From: Octopus bimaculoides
Taxonomy: Eukaryota
Reading direction: 5' to 3'
Length of the DNA: 54,492 nt
NCBI RefSeq assembly: GCF_001194135.2
Contig: NC_068989.1
Location: 37,265,933 to 37,320,424 of the forward strand
The notes below the pieces were generated by a model. It did no database searches. It saw only the letters and a program-made list of their open reading frames with translations, and had not been told where the DNA came from. The translations under genes and the position numbers were made by a program. This document shows positions 3,921 through 41,142 of this stretch, one piece after another; position 1 is the first letter of the stretch, and the number at the start of each line of letters is the position of its first letter.

Positions 3921-4669
3921 GTACCCATCTGTCTGTCAGTCTGTCTCTCTATAGACACACATGTCAGAAATTAAATGGAAAGCTGTTACTGTAAAGAACT
4001 GAAGCTGCAGTACGACTGACGCATATCTACAAAAATTACTTTTTCGTCCCAGAACTGAAGAAATACAGATATAATCTGGACGAAAATTTGAAACCAAAAA
4101 TATGAGATAACAGATCTCATATAGAGATAGACATGATGTGAAGTTTCCTGTGAAGCTGTATATTCCTTCTTTCTCTCCCTCTTCGACTCTGTCTCTTTCT
4201 CCTTCTTTCTGTCCAACGAATATCATTGTAACCAGCAGAACGGAACCCAGTCTTCCAATTAATAGCGAGAAAATGTTCCATGTAATTGCAGTTATATAAT
4301 CATCTTTTTCTCAATAATCATTCAAGTGGAATGTTGACAGTTCTGCGAGAAGGTGACGTACTTGACATATTCCGAAGATTTCTAGATTAGCCATTAACTT
4401 CGCTGTCAAAAACATATGGCTTTACATAAACTGACGATACAAAAGAAACCAAAAAACCCCAACAAAAAAACAACAAACAAACAAAAAGCAAAAATAAGGA
4501 CAAAAAACCCAAATACGTGTGCATATTAAATGGTTGTGACATGCTTATGACAAGTGGAATGCTGATGGCTGAATATTATTCTACTATATCTCATCATAAC
4601 TGCCAACATTATCACTACAATTACCACCATCGCACGTATTAAGAATAATAATGGTGATGATTGACGATG

Positions 4670-4687
4670 GTGATAATAATAATAATG

Positions 4688-4756
<69 letters not shown>

Positions 4757-4991
4757 TGATGATGATGATGATTATGATGATGATAACAGCAACAACAATA
4801 CTCATTATGACAGCCACTTCCAATACTACTACCACTGTCTTCATACTTCTCATCACCATCATCGTTGTTGTCTTTATTGTTGCCATCATCATCATCACCA
4901 CCACCAACAACGCCACTACCAGCACCACCAGCACCAGCACCACCAGCACCACCATCACCACCACCACCACTACCACCATTATCGTCTTGCG

Positions 4992-5074
<83 letters not shown>

Positions 5075-5160
5075 TCAGTACCAGCAGCAACACCATGGTT
5101 ATAGATATTGTGGCCCACCTCCTCCTCATTCTCCCCCTCTACCACTACTGCCTGCTCCCC
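4670..5160. repeat. Compound trinucleotide array (TAA)n-(TGA)n-(CAC)n-(CAT)n-(CAG)n
   Basis: Direct reading; explains the homopolymeric ORFs at 4584-5250. Confidence 0.95.
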
Positions 5161-5384
5161 ATTATTACCATCTGATTTTCTTTCCTCTTCAACTGGGTGT
5201 ATTATTGAGAAGTATTGTTTACAATTACAGAAGTCTGTGATAAAACACACCCCCTTAACACAGAATTAAATTGACAAAGAAGCAAATCATCTGACCTCTG
5301 ACCTCCAAATAAAAGAGCTGAGCGTTCGGTAATTTGGAAACCTTATATAACATTAGAAGACCATAAAAATAATTTCTTAGCAGA

Positions 5385-7510: not shown

Positions 7511-7565
<55 letters not shown>

Positions 7566-7566
7566 T

Positions 7567-7797
7567 ATAGAGATATTAATATTTCTAAGTCTCTCTAAAG
7601 GAGACTACGGCAGCGGTACTGGATATTAATAATTATCGCTAAGCCAGCATGGCAGTCCCAAATATAGGACGAATGCTGCCGTGGATTAGCTCCAAGAGGC
7701 CATCGCCTCTAGCTAGTTATGTGACACACGAATCTGTGTCCTTTATAACCTTCGAACAGGGGAGGTCAGCAGCTTCCCCTTGCTGGTTTGGCATCTG
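7567..7797 (-). mobile_element. Retrozyme-like family A, partial copy (cut by gap)
   Basis: 7567-7620 = rc of 8114-8167 and 7625-7797 = rc of 8300-8472 (1 mismatch seen), joined by GGAT. This is a circular permutation of the 8114-8472 copy. Confidence 0.75.
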
Positions 7798-8113
7798 NNN
7801 NNNNNNNNNNNNNNNNNNNNNNNNNNNNNNNNNNNNNNNNNNNNNNNNNNNNNNNNNNNNNNNNNNNNNNNNNNNNNNNNNNNNNNNNNNNNNNNNNNNN
7901 NNNNNNNNNNNNNNNNNNNNNNNNNNNNNNNNNNNNNNNNNNNNNNNNNNNNNNNNNNNNNNNNNNNNNNNNNNNNNNNNNNNNNNNNNNNNNNNNNNNN
8001 NNNNNNNNNNNNNNNNNNNNNNNNNNNNNNNNNNNNNNNNNNNNNNNNNNNNNNNNNNNNNNNNNNNNNNNNNNNNNNNNNNNNNNNNNNNNNNNNNNNN
8101 NNNNNNNNNNNNN

Positions 8114-8472
8114 AGTACCGCTGCCGTAGTCTCCTTTAGAGAGACTTAGAAATATTAATATCTCTATTTCTGAAAACCAGCGGATGTATTCCACTGAAAT
8201 TAGATAAATAACCTTCCTACAGATAGTCAGTAGCGACGTCTGCTGGCTTCGGCTGCTCTGCATTGACAAGGGGCAACACCCTGAAACTAGTCTAGTCTGC
8301 AGATGCCAAACCAGCAAGGGGAAGCTGCTGACCTCCCCTGTTCGAAGGTTATAAAGGACACAGATTCGTGTGTCACATAACTAGCTAGAGGCGATGGCCT
8401 CTTGGAGCTAATCCACGGCAGCATTCGTCCTATATTTGGGACTGCCATGCTGGCTTGGCGATAATTATTAAT
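8114..8472 (+). mobile_element. Retrozyme-like family A, near-complete 363-nt monomer
   Basis: Non-coding and highly self-complementary; contains a hammerhead. Period 363 nt deduced from the permuted copy. Confidence 0.75.
8241..8316 (+). ncRNA. Type I hammerhead ribozyme, variant core U3:A8
   Basis: Stem I TCTGCA(8257-62)/TGCAGA(8298-303) extended by GGC/GCC and TGCTGG/CCAGCA. Core TTGACAA 8263-69; stem II GGGG-CAACA-CCCT; GAAAC 8283-87; stem III ACTA-GTC-TAGT; GUC site, predicted cleavage after 8297. Confidence 0.82.
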
Positions 8473-8640
8473 GTATATATATTGCATTTTGGAAAATAGT
8501 ACTTTCTGAATAGAATCTGATTATTTCACATGCTCATTCTCAGCTCAACTTAAGGTCAGTGACGGTAGCATCTATATTTCCTTGAAGTAAAAACTCACAT
8601 ACAGACATACATACTCATACGCATATACACACATAGCACA

Positions 8641-8641
8641 T

Positions 8642-8712
<71 letters not shown>
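8641..8712. repeat. (CA)n microsatellite
   Basis: Direct reading. Confidence 0.95.
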
Positions 8713-8714
<2 letters not shown>

Positions 8715-8716
8715 TA

Positions 8717-8904
8717 TATTACGGAGCACACGTACACAATGTATATGCTTTGTTTGTTCGTAACTTGACGCGTTGGAGATGACTCTCTCAAAGCCGGGTG
8801 TGAAAACACCTGAAAGTCATAGCTAGGCGAGACGACTTACCCCCAAGTCCATTTCAGGAACGATGGAAATCGATGTTTCTCCATTTTTGTGGTTTATCAA
8901 AGTT
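8717..8904 (-). mobile_element. Retrozyme-like family B, inverted 5'-truncated copy with degenerate hammerhead
   Basis: Minus strand reads TTGATAA-ACC-ACAAAAAT-GGA-GAAAC-ATCGAT-TTC-CATCG-TTCCTGAA and continues homologous to about 9174-9372. Confidence 0.75.
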
Positions 8905-8934
8905 ATAGTGTAACGATTATGTAATAAACCGGCG

Positions 8935-9406
8935 CTGTGAGAGTCATTTCCAACGCATCAAATTGCAGCCGACCAGTGAACAATCAAAGCGCATACATTC
9001 TGAATGTGTGTTCGATAATGTTTACAACACATGCACTGCTTCTAATTCATATCTTGAATTTATTCCTCAACGTATGCATCGTTAGAGCATGTCAGCAGAT
9101 GGTTTTTACACCGTTATATATAGTCATGGACAAGCAATTTAATTTGCACCAGGTTCTCTTCAGGAATGTGATGCTGATAAGCCACAAAAACGGTGAAACA
9201 TCAATGTCCATCGCTTCTGAATGAGAATTGAGGTAACACGCTTCGCCTGTCCATGACTATGATTTTCAGGTGTTTTAACACCCAGCATTTTGAGAGAGTC
9301 ATATCCAACGAGTCAAATCGCAACTGACCGGCAAGCAAGCAAAGCGCATACATTTTGTATGTATGTTCGATAATGTTTACAACACTTGTGAGGCTTCAAA
9401 TTCATA

Positions 9407-9408
<2 letters not shown>
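8935..9408 (+). mobile_element. Retrozyme-like family B, 1.3 tandem monomers (period 355 nt)
   Basis: About 8935-9053 is repeated at 9290-9408 (GAGTC 8941/9296; GTTCGATAATG 9010/9365), with a hammerhead in between. Confidence 0.8.
9154..9227 (+). ncRNA. Type I hammerhead ribozyme (core CUGAUAA, possibly inactive copy)
   Basis: Stem I GTGATG/CATCGC extended by TTCAGGAA/TTCTGAA and TTCTC/GAGAA. CTGATAA 9174-80; GCC-ACAAAAAC-GGT; GAAAC 9195-99; ATCAAT; GTC 9206-08. Confidence 0.72.
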
Positions 9409-15620: not shown

Positions 15621-16330
15621 TCAAAATTCATTCTCACTGCATTGTACGAAAGTACATTTATATGCGTGTACGCATCTCGATAGTCTTTCAGAAATTCTAT
15701 TAAGTATCTTTTCGTTAGTCCACAGAATAGACAGGGATTCCTCGGAGCAGAGACGGCATCTCCTGGAAATTGCACTGTATGGTTTTGCATGTCTAACTAT
15801 GGACCGAGTAATGTAGTATTTCATATTACCCTCCTTCAGTCGCCATATAAAACCAGCCAAAGATGTCAAATGTTTCTTATTGATTGACCTAAAGCTGGCA
15901 GTATGATTACGATAATGATTCTTAAAGGAATCAGTCGTGTGCCCAATGTAAACAGGGCCATCCCCTTGTGTGCACGGTACATTTATATACAAGATTTGTA
16001 CTCATACAGAGATTCATCAGACATTTTTATTTATCCCTGCATGAGCCTTTATCGATTTTATTTGTACATAAAGCAGTACTGACTTCATTTACCGGCGTTG
16101 TTATCGTGCTAGCGTACCATGAGTATTTTTACTACTACAAATTGGTCGAAGTTGATGATTATCAATGCGGCTTACATCTCCTTGGTTGGCATTTAGATGT
16201 AAATGCTTGCTATATCCAGTAGGTGGGTTACTGAACCCTTGTCGCATTTTGCCATTGTCTATGCGATGCATAAGCTGCTCCAAATTAGCAGAGTTAGCGT
16301 AGGATACCTTCACGGTGTGCCAATTAAAAA
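15621..16330 (-). mobile_element. Penelope-like (Neptune) GIY-YIG endonuclease remnant
   Basis: VYIGHTTDSFKNHYRNHTASF...LTSLAGFIWRLK...AKPYSAISRRCRLCSEE...ILNRISE..SRCVH; upstream KVSYANSANLEQLMHRIDN. Confidence 0.85.
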
Positions 16331-18009: not shown

Positions 18010-19530
18010 TTAACGTCTGTGGCAAGGCTGGAAGGGAATTAACAATTTAAGTCGTATCTTCCTGCAAGGCTTTCTTGGTGGGCACATTGTGATGGGAAGT
18101 TGCTGTTGTTGTTTCTTCATGGTGGTGAGGAGAGTTTTATATGTCTGCATGGCAGCATTGAAAGCATTTTTAAATTGGAGAGACTGAAACATATAGGGAT
18201 CCCCGGCTTCCGCTTCCCTTGCAATTTCTTTGCTGTCCTTAAAATGTCAGACAGACATTCGATTGCCAAGCCCACCTCATCCTCCTCTTCCTCTGGATCT
18301 GGCGCTTTCTCCTCCTCCTACTGCGATGAGGGTTTGTCTTTTTATGTCTTTAAGAGCAGCATGTATGACTGACAGGCCCGTTGTGATCGTAAAGTTACGT
18401 CAGTATTCCTTTAACTTGAAATTCTCGTCTGAATCCACTGCGTCCACAAGGTGTTGGAGAGAGTACCGAGTGTACAGATCACGCCTTGATCCGTAGGCTA
18501 GATCAGGGAGGTAGTGTTGGCAGGGAGGAACTCGACTTGGATTCCCTGTGATTCAAACCCCAAAAGTGACCACCAGCATTATCCATAACGAGCAACACTT
18601 TGAATTTCATGCAAACATTTTGGACGTATTCCTTGGCTCGAGGGATGAAGCATTGATGGAACCAATTCAAAGTTAGACTTTTGTTAATTCAGGCTTGGGG
18701 TTGTGCATCCAGTGGACAGGCAGCAGGTATTCATTCTTACTTTTGAAGCCCCTCGGGTTCGCGGACTTGTAGATAAGTCCTGGTTTCATCATGGTGCCAG
18801 CAGTATTGCCACACGTAATTAGCATCACTTTGTCTTTCTGTGCCTAAACCCCTGGGCTCTGGCTTCGTCCTTCATGATGTACGCTTTGGAAGACATCTTC
18901 CGAACAAGCCAGTCTCGTCCATATTGAAAACCTGTTCCGACTCGTATCCCTTGTCCTCGATTATCTGCCTAAAGGTCTCGAGGTACTTCTTTGTCGGCTG
19001 ATGCTACCTCTCCATGCAGGGAAACACACCTCATTTTAGAACGTTCCCGGTTTGAAAATCGGGCTCCGGTCCTGTCAATGGTCTTGGTTGCGGTTCTTCG
19101 GTGCCTTCTTCTCCGTCTCCTCTGGCGAACTACAGGTATAATTTCCTCTCTGTCTCGCGGATGATGTTACCGCTCAAAAGGATGTTTTTCTTCATGTAGT
19201 CACTGATCCACGGTGCCAAGACAGATTCCATCCTGACAAAGTATTAATTTCCCTCTATCGTTATCTGTTTGGCACTTTTACAGATACTTACTGCTACGGT
19301 AGTTCTGATCGCCATCTTGTTCTTCTTTATGTATTGTACTGTGCTTTCGTTGACAACATAATAGCAACCTACTGCAGCATAACTTTTACTTTCCCGGAAC
19401 ATATCCATAAATTGTGTCTTCTCATGGAGCGTCATAATGTTTTTCTGGCACTCAAATTCACTGTCGGAAGCCTTAGAAGGTGTAAGGCGTTTGAACGGCA
19501 TCTTAAGTCTTTAATAACACGCTGCGAAAA
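18010..19530 (-). mobile_element. Tigger/pogo-type transposase remnant
   Basis: N-terminal HTH-psq-like IMTLHEKTQFMDMFRESKSYAAV; core EQVFNMDETGL, KPGLIYKSANPRGFK, KVLLVMDNAGGH; C-terminal SLQFKNAFNAAMQTYK...QLPITM. Confidence 0.88.
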
Positions 19531-36600: not shown

Positions 36601-38159
36601 CATTATTGATCCAAAGGAGGAGAAAGAGCTTGCTTTACATGATTTATTAGAGGTTTCAATGTAACCCAAATAGCACCTGTTTGTAAGGTAAGCAATTTTC
36701 CTGAGAAATAAAAGGACGAAATGGTCACGACTGGAACTCATCTGATCAGAAGTCTTCTGAATCAGTACTGACATATAACAAAATAACAATAACTAGAAAT
36801 TATGAACTGGTTAGAAACAATTCGGAATTGCTTCGTGTACTCGTGTACTATCTGCACTGTCTTTGAGAAATGGTTTTGAATATCTTGCCAGATAAGGAGG
36901 AAGGTTATAATGATTTGACTCAATCCTATTATAGTATTGATACGTGATTTCTGTTTGATTTTTATTACCAGACATTAGTGGAATAACATATGTGTATTAT
37001 TTTGGGAAAACAAAATCTTATAGACTATGATATGCATGTTCTTTCTTAACACGTTCCAGCAGATTCAAATATATGTTAATCGCTGTTATGTTTCAACTCC
37101 AGAGAACAACTTCTCCCTTCAGATGATGTGTGTTGGCAACTCATTCGATTAAATGATATAGAGATACATTGATACCCTAATGTTTCGACCTCATTGTGTC
37201 TCTCTAGTCAAAGCTATGGTGGAGCCCTCAGTCTGTCGGAAGATGTTAAGAATGAATATGCACATCAATGCCTTGATTCTCACCGTTTTACTTGCTCATA
37301 ATAATTCAATAAATCATAGAATTATTTGGTTTAATTCCTTAGAATAGTTACCTTTTAGGTAAGTAATCAAAGAAGGAACAGCTGTAGAGATTCTTCCAGT
37401 TCTTATTTGGAGAAGAGCTAAATATTTTTTCATGAATTTATACCAAGGCAGAGGCAAAGGCTCAAGCTATTGGACTTTTCACCACATAATTTTCAATTCA
37501 AGCCTCAAATTATTCTGCTGACACCATTCTGCCTCTGCTCTTACCACACAACTAAATTGGTAGCAGTTATTAGAATGATATCAAGCTGCATAAACCATTA
37601 TTTCAAAAGTAATACTAATCTTTTTTCTAAATCTAAAGGATTCGTGGATGCAGGGATTATCTCTGATTTCCTCTGGATAAGATGCCGGTCTATTTCAGCA
37701 TTGTGAGGCACGGAAAGTGCTACTCCAACATGCAGCTGTAAATCAATGTTGATGAGAAGCTTGCTCTATCACGTTAGACAAGGCGCTAAATAGCATTCTC
37801 CTTACCAATGACAATACAAACTAGAAACGGAAACTCTATTAGATCACTTAACGTGCTAGATATTACAGTCAAATATGCCTGAAATCCTACCCCGTAGCTT
37901 TTAAAAAGAAAGGACACATTGAATAAAGTAATTCTAGATACATTATGACTGAACTAAATACTAGATGACATGGGAATTCCCAACTATAGATGGTTATTGT
38001 TGATCATCGAGAGCTTTCTTGGATGGTGAGTGCAAGTTATTGAATACTGGATATATGATACGAACACAATATCTCACCTGGTTCTGTTGAAAGTTTGTTA
38101 ATATAGTTAAAGCATGAAGCATTAAAAATGGAAAATATATAGAGACGGTGAAATAAGGT

Positions 38160-40618: not shown

Positions 40619-40831
40619 ACAAAATCTAAATATAAACACAAACACGAACACATCCACCCCAACACACACATTTTAATCGGAAGAATTTTACGAAAGTAAC
40701 TCAAGGGCCAGAAGTTTCACGCATGGCAAATATATGAAATAGTTTAAGTATAGTCTTAAACGAAACTCTTGCACCTCAAGTAAATTTTGTTGTTAAGTCA
40801 TGAATGACTTCCTCCTCACTTGTTTGTTTCG

Positions 40832-41142
40832 CTGCTTCTAATTCATATTTGAAAACCAGCAGATAGTTTTACACCGTTTAACATATAGTCATGGACAAGC
40901 TTTTCAATTTGTCTCCGGTTCGGTTCAGGATCGTGATATTGATGAGCCAAAAACATAGCGAAACATCGATGTCCATCACTCCTGAATGGGACTTGGGGTG
41001 AGTTCTTTTACCTGTATATGACTATGACTTTCAGGTGTTTTAACCCCCAGTGCTTTGAGCGGGTTATCTCCACCGCGTCAAATCGCAACCAGCCGGTGAA
41101 CTAGTAAAGAACATACATCGTATATGTATGTATGTTCGATAA
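40832..41142 (+). mobile_element. Retrozyme-like family B, dispersed monomer
   Basis: Homologous to about 9036-9372 with a short internal deletion; ends in (CA)n. Confidence 0.8.
40924..40986 (+). ncRNA. Type I hammerhead motif (core UUGAUGA)
   Basis: TTCAGGA/TCCTGAA and GTGAT/ATCAC stems; TTGATGA 40939-45; GC...GC stem II; GAAAC 40960-64; palindromic ACATCGATGT; GTC 40971-73. Confidence 0.72.

What the first reader, a model, noticed from the sequence alone, without database searches (positions are those of the whole stretch)
8241..8316. Hammerhead ribozyme with a compensated non-canonical core (U3:A8, G10.1-U11.1)
Seen: a complete type I hammerhead fold, TGCTGG-CTTC-GGC-TGC-TCTGCA-[TTGACAA]-GGGG-CAACA-CCCT-[GAAAC]-TAGTCTA-[GTC]-TGCAGA-T-GCC-AAA-CCAGCA. 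It is nested in a longer rod (GTCAGTAGC 8226-34 with GCTGCTGAC 8324-32; AACCTTC 8210-16 with GAAGGTT 8344-50). Known: the canonical core is CUGANGA...GAAA...NUH, and C3 pairs with G8 in the active fold. A stem I internal loop ~6 bp from the core docking on loop II is typical of natural type I motifs such as Schistosoma SM-alpha. Inference: both C3 and G8 are swapped while keeping Watson-Crick pairing (U3:A8), so this may be an active variant that CUGANGA-based searches would miss.
Basis: partly seen in the sequence, partly recalled or inferred. Interest (0 to 1): 0.9.

Follow-up and report, generated by a model that had tools for sequence, protein, structure and literature searches.

The report
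Hammerhead ribozyme in a retrozyme-like repeat
The flagged sequence is a real type I hammerhead ribozyme motif with a paired U3-A8 swap in its core. It sits in a ~363-bp non-coding retroelement, a kind of element and a core variant that have both been described before, so it is a sound but fairly ordinary find.

Summary
A covariance model built only from validated type I hammerheads, without the candidate, finds 8257-8303 at 27.7 bits (E 2e-5) with 13 of 13 standard pairs. Rfam finds nothing, but it also scores a canonical control at only 19 bits.

The motif caps a long rod inside a ~363-bp unit (8114-8472). That unit is present as an inverted copy plus a head-to-tail junction across an assembly gap, inserted in a (TA)n microsatellite. 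This is the layout of metazoan non-LTR retrozymes and Penelope-like-element derivatives.

The same model finds two more hammerheads (9168-9214, 40933-40979), and alignment reveals a decayed one (8860-8906, minus strand), all from a related family. States at positions 3/8 across the four copies are U/A, U/A, C/A and U/G. U3-A8 therefore looks like a lineage feature, not this copy's private decay.

Natural and in vitro-active U3-A8 hammerheads were already reported in 2011 and 2014. Catalytic activity is untested, and this locus has only one visible ribozyme copy. Verdict: new member of a known kind; interest 0.3.

The parts
8257..8303 (+). Type I hammerhead junction: helix I UCUGCA/UGCAGA, core UUGACAA (U3, A8), helix II GGGG-CAACA-CCCU (G10.1.U11.1), GAAA, helix III ACUA-GUC-UAGU, C17
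   Evidence: Descriptor hit. Covariance model R1 scores 27.7 bits, E 2e-5, with 13/13 standard pairs.
8297..8298 (+). Predicted scissile bond (GUC|U), after C17
   Evidence: Position in the model alignment. Inferred only; cleavage was not tested.
8241..8316 (+). Extended helix I: 6 bp, internal loop UGC/U, GGC/GCC, internal loop, UGCUGG/CCAGCA
   Evidence: Same layout as the Rfam HH9 consensus structure printed.
8205..8355 (+). Long rod that continues helix I outward
   Evidence: MFE -63.4 kcal/mol, z -6.06.
8114..8472 (+). Forward copy of the ~363-nt unit (family A), positions 1-359
   Evidence: Self-BLAST and reading of the junction. GC 46%. Permuted circular fold z -5.8.
7625..7797 (-). Inverted copy of unit positions 187-359, with 1 mismatch in 173 nt
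7621..7624 (-). ATCC, the head-to-tail junction between unit end and unit start
7567..7620 (-). 'Tail': unit positions 1-54 repeated after the junction, 100% identical to 8114-8167
7798..8113 (.). Assembly gap between the two inverted arms. It should hide the rest of the inverted copy, including its hammerhead.
   Evidence: Inference.
7514..7566 (.). (TC)n(TA)n microsatellite flanking the left arm
8473..8484 (.). G(TA)n flank of the right arm
9168..9214 (+). Family B hammerhead B1: GUGAUG CUGAUAA GCCA CAAAAA CGGU GAAAC AUCAAUGU C CAUCGC (C3, A8)
   Evidence: R1 scores 29.1 bits, E 8e-6.
8860..8906 (-). Family B hammerhead B2, decayed in the helix I 5' strand; core UUGAUAA (U3, A8)
   Evidence: Alignment, coordinates. 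R1 gives only 5.7 bits, partial.
40933..40979 (+). Family B hammerhead B3: core UUGAUGA (U3, G8); helix III ACAUCGAUGU is a perfect palindrome
   Evidence: R1 scores 26.1 bits, E 6e-5.
8711..9407 (.). Family B complex: inverted copy 8711-8935(-) plus a partial tandem 8936-9407(+) with ~355-nt period, between (CA)n and (TA)n microsatellites

Best explanation
The motif is a genuine type I hammerhead ribozyme. It belongs to a ~363-bp non-coding, highly self-paired retroelement unit of the metazoan 'non-LTR retrozyme' / Penelope-like-element (PLE) derivative kind.

Proposed life cycle, inferred from the literature on that class: tandem transcripts self-cleave after C17 (8297). Cleavage probably occurs as a double hammerhead, in which the near-palindromic helix III of two copies pairs. 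The monomers are then circularised by a host RNA ligase. A PLE reverse transcriptase/endonuclease copies them in trans into microsatellite targets by target-primed (twin-primed) reverse transcription. That process leaves inverted plus partially tandem copies.

The U3-A8 core is an isosteric swap of the C3-G8 pair. It was most likely already present in the source RNA and is shared with a related family in the same window. It is a lineage feature, not this copy's private decay.

The locus itself shows only one hammerhead per strand, so it is probably a dead-end insertion rather than a source of circles.

Shown here: the motif, its architecture, the covariation, the repeat anatomy and the recurrence of U3/A8. 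Inferred: cleavage, circularisation and mobilisation by PLEs.
For: 1. Independent model. Covariance model R1 was built from the Rfam HH9 consensus, the coral, mussel and two axolotl retrozyme ribozymes (supplement of PMC7229834) and a lake-metagenome tandem repeat (L004). The candidate was excluded. R1 scores 8257-8303 at 27.7 bits, E 2e-5, with no non-standard pair. It gives 0 hits in 36 kb of unrelated loci.
2. Architecture. Helix I is 6 bp followed by an internal loop, helix II is 4 bp, loop 2 is 5 nt, and helix III is palindromic. This is the 'canonical metazoan type I' layout described in PMC4209133 and seen in the HH9 consensus.
3. Sequence match. The helix II plus loop 2 pattern GGGGCAACACCCY, with flanking core, matched one contig in JGI metagenomes. 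That contig is a 626-bp tandem repeat carrying a canonical CUGAUGA hammerhead.
4. Covariation across A, B1, B2 and B3. 84% of cells are paired, against 23-39% for slid controls. 11 of 16 pairs change on both sides. 0 of 500 shuffles reach this.
5. Repeat anatomy. There is a head-to-tail junction (ATCC), an inverted arm with a 54-nt tail, and TA-rich microsatellite flanks. Family B has the same layout. This matches the PLE and retrozyme descriptions in PMC8557442, PMC7229834 and the 2026 preprint.
6. U3-A8 as a lineage feature.
   - States at positions 3/8 are U/A (A), U/A (B2), C/A (B1) and U/G (B3).
   - With rates measured on family B, a U3-A8 ancestor is 34 times likelier than C3-G8.
   - In family B, N7 is U, so A8 there is not CpG decay.
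   - The two arms of A differ at 1 of 227 nt, so three post-insertion hits within a 47-nt motif are unlikely.
7. Folding. The energy gap between the hammerhead fold and the MFE is 3.4 kcal/mol. That lies within the range of proven active retrozyme ribozymes, 2.1-7.4. The dimer is predicted at -65.3 kcal/mol against 2 x -27.5 for monomers.
Against: - Rfam finds no hammerhead, even at E <= 10 on 94 nt. This is weakened by the canonical control L004, which scores only 19.2 bits against a gathering score of 52.
- All three departures from the canonical core are C>T or G>A transitions. G8 and C11.1 lie in CpG context in this copy, as expected for decay.
- U11.1 lets A9 pair with it, giving a slipped helix II register (probability about 0.8 versus 0.14).
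- Only four copies were available, and all come from one window. No further copy of family A could be retrieved.
- No RT/endonuclease ORF adjoins the unit.
- Only 1.15 tandem units are visible.
- PLE-type hammerheads often cleave poorly in vitro (PMC4209133).
Confidence: 0.75

Rival explanations
1. Dead relic. The ancestor was a canonical CUGACGA hammerhead. U3, A8 and U11.1 are unselected GC-to-AT transitions, two of them at CpG sites, and the apparent 'compensation' is a coincidence. The RNA does not cleave.
For: - All three changes are transitions in the common direction. On family B, measured per-lineage C>T is 0.089 and G>A is 0.096, against T>C 0.042 and A>G 0.060.
- C7-G8 and C11.1-G12 are CpGs in this copy.
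- Family B copies show single changes at position 3 or 8 plus broken pairs.
Against: - There are no broken pairs in 14 bp of the candidate's helices.
- The arms are 99.6% identical.
- U3 occurs in 3 of 4 copies and A8 in 3 of 4, including copies where position 8 is not in a CpG.
- The likelihood ratio is 34 against a canonical ancestor in family B.
Confidence: 0.2
2. The unit is a pseudo-LTR of an autonomous Penelope-like element whose coding part is hidden in or lost around the gap. It would then not be a stand-alone non-autonomous retrozyme.
For: The inverted 5'-truncated copy, the tail at one end only and the (TA)n target are textbook PLE insertion features (PMC8557442). Retrozymes and pLTRs are reported to be sister sequences (preprint).
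Against: - There is no RT or GIY-YIG ORF next to either arm.
- The gap is scaffolded at 316 N, far less than a 3-4 kb PLE body.
- The related family B complex is fully assembled through its centre and has no ORF.
Confidence: 0.12
3. A chance hammerhead look-alike inside an unrelated hairpin-forming repeat (MITE, SINE or miRNA-like hairpin).
For: A relaxed descriptor allowing any base at positions 3 and 8 gives 0.13 chance hits per window. At that rate a Gb-sized genome would hold many chance hits to such relaxed descriptors.
Against: - Model E 2e-5, plus two further strong hits in related repeats.
- Covariation across the copies.
- The palindromic helix III, and helix II/loop 2 identical to those of a canonical tandem-repeat hammerhead.
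- No tRNA or other small-RNA head.
- The unit ends are not inverted repeats of each other.
Confidence: 0.03

Closest known systems
Metazoan non-LTR retrozymes with type I hammerheads (Cervera & de la Pena 2020, PMC7229834)
   Same: A unit of a few hundred bp arranged head to tail, moderate GC, one type I hammerhead per unit, and a highly self-paired predicted monomer. The ribozyme sits where helix I continues into the rest of the RNA. The coral ribozyme ...CUGCA CUGAUGA GGCC AGAAA GGCC GAAAC AGUACU GUC UGCAG... is nearly superimposable on the candidate.
   Different: Only about 1.15 units are visible here, not long arrays. The core is U3-A8 with G10.1.U11.1. GC is 46%, at the upper edge of the published range. 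Expression as circular RNA is unknown.
Hammerheads of Penelope-like element pseudo-LTRs, including the U3-A8 variant of Schistosoma mansoni Cercyon elements (Cervera & de la Pena 2014, PMC4209133)
   Same: The U3-A8 covariation, a palindromic helix III implying a dimeric mode of action, and the inverted/tandem insertion layout with microsatellite targets.
   Different: [quoted passage not shown] This motif has the full canonical layout. No RT-EN ORF is attached.
Rfam Hammerhead_HH9 / Hammerhead_1 (amniote intronic, Schistosoma Sm-alpha, newt satellite 2 type)
   Same: A distal helix, an internal loop, a 6-bp helix I, a 4-bp helix II, a loop 2 that starts with CAA, and a GUC cleavage triplet.
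   Different: It scores below E = 10 on these models. It has three core-adjacent substitutions and a longer helix III.
L004, a 626-bp tandem repeat in a lake metagenome contig (TBL_comb48_EPIDRAFT_1067204)
   Same: Identical helix II and loop 2 (GGGG CAACA CCC) and a palindromic helix III. It is tandem, with 99.2% identity between units.
   Different: It has a canonical CUGAUGA core and C11.1, and a different helix I. There is no detectable similarity outside the ribozyme.

Membership tests
Hammerhead ribozyme, type I | Three-helix junction with helix I open, and helices II and III closed by loops | tested here: met
   Descriptor hit. Model alignment with 13/13 standard pairs.
Hammerhead ribozyme, type I | Conserved core C3 U4 G5 A6 N7 G8 A9 / G12 A13 A14 / A15.1-U16.1 / H17 | tested here: inconclusive
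   11 of 13 positions are canonical. C3 and G8 are replaced together by U3 and A8. This covariation is documented in natural, active hammerheads (PMC3088659; PMC4209133). The strict consensus is therefore not met, but the documented variant consensus is.
Hammerhead ribozyme, type I | G10.1-C11.1 closing pair of helix II | tested here: not met
   The pair is G10.1.U11.1. This favours a slipped register, A9-U11.1. Natural active ribozymes with U.U at this position exist (PMC3088659; axolotl Amex2).
Hammerhead ribozyme, type I | Match to curated Rfam hammerhead models at the gathering score | tested here: not met
   No hit even at E <= 10. The test is insensitive here: the canonical control L004 reaches only 19.2 of 52 bits.
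Hammerhead ribozyme, type I | Match to a model of experimentally validated metazoan type I ribozymes | tested here: met
   R1 scores 27.7 bits, E 2e-5, second best hit in the window. 0 hits in 36 kb of control DNA.
Hammerhead ribozyme, type I | Compensatory changes in the helices among relatives | tested here: met
   11 of 16 pairs change on both sides; 84% of cells are paired against 23-39% when slid. Caveats: only four sequences, and the alignment was guided by the motif.
Hammerhead ribozyme, type I | Site-specific self-cleavage 3' of position 17 | not testable with these tools
   Needs in vitro transcription and cleavage mapping.
Metazoan non-LTR retrozyme | Head-to-tail repeats of a 150-450 bp unit, each with a type I hammerhead | tested here: inconclusive
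   The unit is 363 nt and one head-to-tail junction is present. Only one hammerhead is assembled, and the rest may lie in the gap.
Metazoan non-LTR retrozyme | Low GC and a highly self-paired monomer | tested here: met
   GC is 46%. The paper gives <50% in its text and <45% in a figure legend. Circular fold z -5.8 with 61% of bases paired.
Metazoan non-LTR retrozyme | Expression as circular RNA | not testable with these tools
   No transcriptome of the source organism is available here.
Penelope-like element (pseudo-LTR) | Flanks an ORF encoding RT and GIY-YIG endonuclease | tested here: not met
   No such ORF lies next to either arm or in family B.
Penelope-like element (pseudo-LTR) | Partial tandem plus inverted 5'-truncated copy, a tail at one end, and a microsatellite target | tested here: met
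   compared with the description in PMC8557442.

The most novel reading that the evidence does not exclude
A whole superfamily of retrozyme-like elements in this genome (families A and B) may have fixed U3-A8 as its working catalytic core in an otherwise full-architecture type I hammerhead. The C3.A8 and U3.G8 copies would then be single-step neighbours. If so, the variant would be catalytically competent, possibly dimer-dependent or slower. It would offer a natural system for asking how a ribozyme core pair is exchanged during evolution.
Probability: 0.3. Interest if true: 0.45.

Novelty: new member of a known kind. Interest (0 to 1): 0.3.

Why it matters
It adds a probable retrozyme/PLE-derived hammerhead family to an animal-like genome whose organism I could not identify.

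It shows that Rfam's hammerhead models miss even canonical members of this class. In one 54-kb window, the four related copies carry three different base combinations at the C3-G8 core pair. A genome-wide census and a simple cleavage assay could turn that into a case study of compensatory evolution inside a catalytic core.

It does not change what is known about hammerhead chemistry, because U3-A8 variants are already documented as natural and active.

Tried and rejected
- **Rfam.** I ran it at the gathering score on the whole window and at E <= 10 on 347 nt and on 94 nt. No hammerhead appeared. I judged this insensitive after the control.
- **Protein database trick.** I used spurious ORFs across the unit as protein queries to fish other copies out of the 5.8-billion-protein collection. 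Nothing was found.
- **More copies of family A.** There are none in the window beyond the inverted arm. The scan of viral contigs found nothing. The metagenome scan found only L004.
- **More copies of family B.** The viral contig scan found nothing. The four bacterial genome hits are chance matches with no hammerhead nearby.
- **SINE or tRNA-derived origin.** No tRNA and no small-RNA family hit.
- **MITE.** The unit ends are not inverted repeats of each other.
- **A partner PLE in the window.**
  - No RT ORF was found.
  - The GIY-YIG-looking ORF at 15621-15992 has no Pfam hit and only one anonymous homologue.
- **Identifying the organism.** A search for the Logan run accessions in the literature found no paper, so 'cephalopod' stays unverified.
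- **First MAFFT alignment of reference hammerheads.** It was structurally wrong at the 3' side. I replaced it with an N-padded, gap-free alignment. The padding fixes the loop lengths in the model, which is a limitation.

Full report
**1. The observation**

The window is a draft eukaryotic scaffold with seven N gaps, 37% GC and many microsatellites. So are the outer pairings 8226-34/8324-32 and 8210-16/8344-50. The rod 8205-8355 folds at -63.4 kcal/mol, z = -6.1 against dinucleotide shuffles.

A type I descriptor that I wrote hits one place in the window on either strand, 8257-8303. The descriptor requires:
- helix I of at least 5 bp;
- the core N3-UGA-N-N8-A;
- helix II of 3-7 bp;
- GAAA;
- a helix III that ends in U16.1;
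- H17.

With the U3/A8 core, shuffled windows give 0.013 hits each (4 of 300). The canonical core gives 0.003, and any base at positions 3 and 8 gives 0.13.

'TAGTCTA' cannot be a stem. Helix III is ACUA-GUC-UAGU. Read as ACUAGUCUAGU, it is an 11-nt near-palindrome.

**2. Surroundings**

Self-comparison shows that 8300-8472 recurs as its reverse complement at 7797-7625, with 1 mismatch in 173 nt. Likewise 8114-8167 recurs at 7620-7567 with no mismatch.

Read on the minus strand, the left arm runs: unit positions 187-359, then ATCC, then unit positions 1-54, then (TA)n(GA)n. The right arm is unit 1-359 followed by G(TA)n.

This gives a ~363-nt unit with the following features:
- a head-to-tail junction;
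- two arms in inverted orientation, with their 3' ends pointing outward;
- an extra 'tail' at one end only;
- TA-rich microsatellite on both sides;
- an assembly gap exactly where a long palindrome would defeat short reads.

The unit has no tRNA-like head and no terminal inverted repeats. Its only ORFs are short and have no database relatives. Permuted to start at the predicted cleavage site, it folds into a branched rod, z = -5.8.

These are the published hallmarks of PLE-type insertions: partial tandems, an adjacent inverted 5'-truncated copy, a 30-40 bp tail and a (TA)n target bias (PMC8557442). They also fit metazoan non-LTR retrozymes, which have units of a few hundred bp, moderate GC, one type I hammerhead per unit and highly self-paired circles (PMC7229834). 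A 2026 preprint argues that retrozymes are non-autonomous PLE derivatives.

**3. Is it a hammerhead?**

Rfam says nothing, even at E <= 10 on 94 nt. That silence is weak evidence. I scanned JGI metagenomes for the candidate's helix II and loop 2 with a degenerate core. The scan returned one contig, L004, a 626-bp tandem repeat. It carries a canonical CUGAUGA-GGGG-CAACA-CCCC-GAAAC-CGGUA|UUAGG hammerhead. Rfam scores that canonical ribozyme at only 19.2 bits against a gathering score of 52.

I therefore built my own covariance model, R1, from six type I hammerheads and left the candidate out. The six were:
- the HH9 consensus as printed;
- the coral, mussel and two axolotl retrozyme ribozymes, taken from the constructs table of PMC7229834;
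- L004.

The alignment was padded with N to keep the structural register.

On the whole window, R1 gives three strong hits, the same with filters on or off:
- 9168-9214 at 29.1 bits, E 8e-6;
- the candidate at 27.7 bits, E 2e-5, with no non-standard pair;
- 40933-40979 at 26.1 bits, E 6e-5.

R1 gives no hit at E <= 1 in 36 kb of unrelated loci.

The candidate's helix sizes are those described as canonical for metazoan type I motifs: 6 bp then an internal loop, 4 bp, and a palindromic helix III. The coral ribozyme, which cleaves at about 0.8 per minute, is almost superimposable on it. Coral reads ...CUGCA CUGAUGA GGCC AGAAA GGCC GAAAC AGUACU GUC UGCAG. The candidate reads ...CUGCA UUGACAA GGGG CAACA CCCU GAAAC UAGUCUA GUC UGCAG.

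**4. A second family**

The two extra hits belong to a different repeat, family B. Copies 9093-9373 and 40857-41142 are 77% identical. Family B shows the same insertion layout as A: an inverted copy at 8711-8935(-), then a partial tandem at 8936-9407(+) with a ~355-nt period, set between (CA)n and (TA)n.

Aligning the units reveals a third, decayed B hammerhead at 8860-8906(-). Families A and B share the exact 11-mer TGAAAACCAGC. It occurs only twice in the window, each time 83-86 nt upstream of a hammerhead. They are therefore probably distant relatives.

Across A, B1, B2 and B3, the hammerhead helices covary:
- 84% of cells are paired, against 23-39% when the partners are slid;
- 11 of 16 pairs change on both sides;
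- none of 500 shuffles reaches this.

The caveats are that there are only four sequences and that the alignment was guided by the motif. B1 also sits at the tip of a long rod, z = -4.8.

**5. U3-A8: decay or lineage feature?**

Evidence for decay:
- All three departures from the canonical core (C3U, G8A, C11.1U) are transitions in the common direction.
- In this copy, G8 and C11.1 are in CpG context.

Evidence against decay:
- The candidate has no broken pair in 14 bp of helix.
- Its two arms differ at 1 of 227 nt. If the arms date from the insertion, about 0.1 substitutions are expected in the 47-nt motif since then.
- Positions 3/8 read U/A in A, U/A in B2, C/A in B1 and U/G in B3, so the local majority is U3-A8. 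In family B, N7 is U, so A8 there is not at a CpG.

I measured substitution rates on 208 three-way columns of family B. Per lineage they are C>T 0.089, G>A 0.096, T>C 0.042 and A>G 0.060. Pairwise identities are 74-77%, which is star-like. Under these rates the likelihood of each ancestral state is:

| Ancestor | Likelihood |
|---|---|
| U3-A8 | 0.018 |
| C3.A8 | 0.0034 |
| U3.G8 | 0.0029 |
| C3-G8 | 0.0005 |

That is a ratio of 34 over the canonical pair.

With so few copies this is suggestive, not conclusive.

The G10.1.U11.1 wobble is less convincing as a feature. Position 11.1 reads U, C and A in the three B copies, and it sits in a CpG.

**6. Could it cleave?**

This cannot be decided by computation. 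The hammerhead secondary structure lies 3.4 kcal/mol above the MFE. That is inside the range for proven active retrozyme ribozymes computed the same way: coral 3.6, mussel 7.4, axolotl 2.1 and 6.2.

Two copies are predicted to form a double hammerhead through an intermolecular helix III of 5 bp + U.U + 5 bp. The helix III duplex alone is -10.9 kcal/mol, and the dimer is -65.3 against 2 x -27.5 for monomers. This is the mode of action known for newt, viroid and PLE-type motifs.

On the negative side, U11.1 allows a slipped helix II register that sequesters A9 (probability about 0.8 versus 0.14). Also, only one hammerhead per strand is assembled at this locus, so it is probably not itself a source of unit-length RNA.

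**7. Comparison with what is known, and novelty**

- Perreault et al. 2011 state that C3 and G8 covary to U3 and A8 in several natural hammerheads, and that such variants were already known to be active in vitro (PMC3088659).
- Cervera & de la Pena 2014 found the same covariation in Schistosoma mansoni Cercyon PLE hammerheads, with about 1,300 hits (PMC4209133).
- Mismatches at 10.1-11.1 occur in active natural ribozymes.
- I found no paper in the library that combines hammerhead ribozymes with octopus, squid or cuttlefish in a relevant way. I could not verify the organism.

The finding is best filed as a new member of a known kind: a retrozyme/PLE-derived type I hammerhead family with the documented U3-A8 core variant.

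**8. Verdict**

The ribozyme motif is real, and the compensated pair is real and probably lineage-level. The variant is not new, and activity is untested.
- Interest is 0.3.

The most useful by-products are the additional hammerheads in the window, the evidence that Rfam models miss this class, and a concrete census-plus-assay plan.

Noticed in passing
window 8711-9407, and 40815-41142: A second retrozyme-like family (B) with hammerheads at 9168-9214(+), 8860-8906(-, decayed) and 40933-40979(+). It is arranged as an inverted plus partial tandem complex (~355-nt period) between (CA)n and (TA)n microsatellites.
   Followed up: yes
window 37167-37213 (-): A weak hammerhead-like match (15.6 bits, E 0.06): CUUUGA CUAGAGA GACA CAAUGA GGUC GAAAC AUUAGGGU A UCAAUG. 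The core is damaged at positions 5-6. It may be a decayed copy of a third family.
   Followed up: partly
window 8417-8446 (-), mirrored at 7651-7680 (+): On the opposite strand of unit A lies the hairpin GGCAG-UCCCAAAUAUAGGA-CGAAUG-CUGCC. From memory, it resembles helix II and loop 2 of Schistosoma/newt-type hammerheads, but it lacks the CUGANGA box. It scores only 6.4 bits, so it is either a relic or chance.
   Followed up: partly
L004 (lake metagenome contig TBL_comb48_EPIDRAFT_1067204), 1-1157: A 626-bp tandem repeat (99.2% identity between units) with a canonical type I hammerhead and a palindromic helix III (ACCGGU). It looks like an undescribed retrozyme from some freshwater eukaryote. 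Rfam scores it at only 19 bits.
   Followed up: partly
window 15621-15992 (-): A 123-aa ORF with a GIY-(x10)-YIG-like start (MYINVPCTQGDGPVYIGHT...RNH) and a later CxxC. It has no Pfam hit and one anonymous 64%-identical homologue in Logan assemblies (P0001). It may be a remnant of a GIY-YIG endonuclease from a mobile element.
   Followed up: partly
window 18503-19501 (-): Broken ORFs matching CENP-B_N (E 1e-4) and DDE_1 (E 2.5e-4 and 3.5e-3). This is a pogo/Tigger-like DNA transposon remnant.
   Followed up: partly
window 4584-5250: An extremely low-complexity stretch that gives long homopolymeric 'ORFs' (runs of I, L, M, N, D) on both strands.
   Followed up: no
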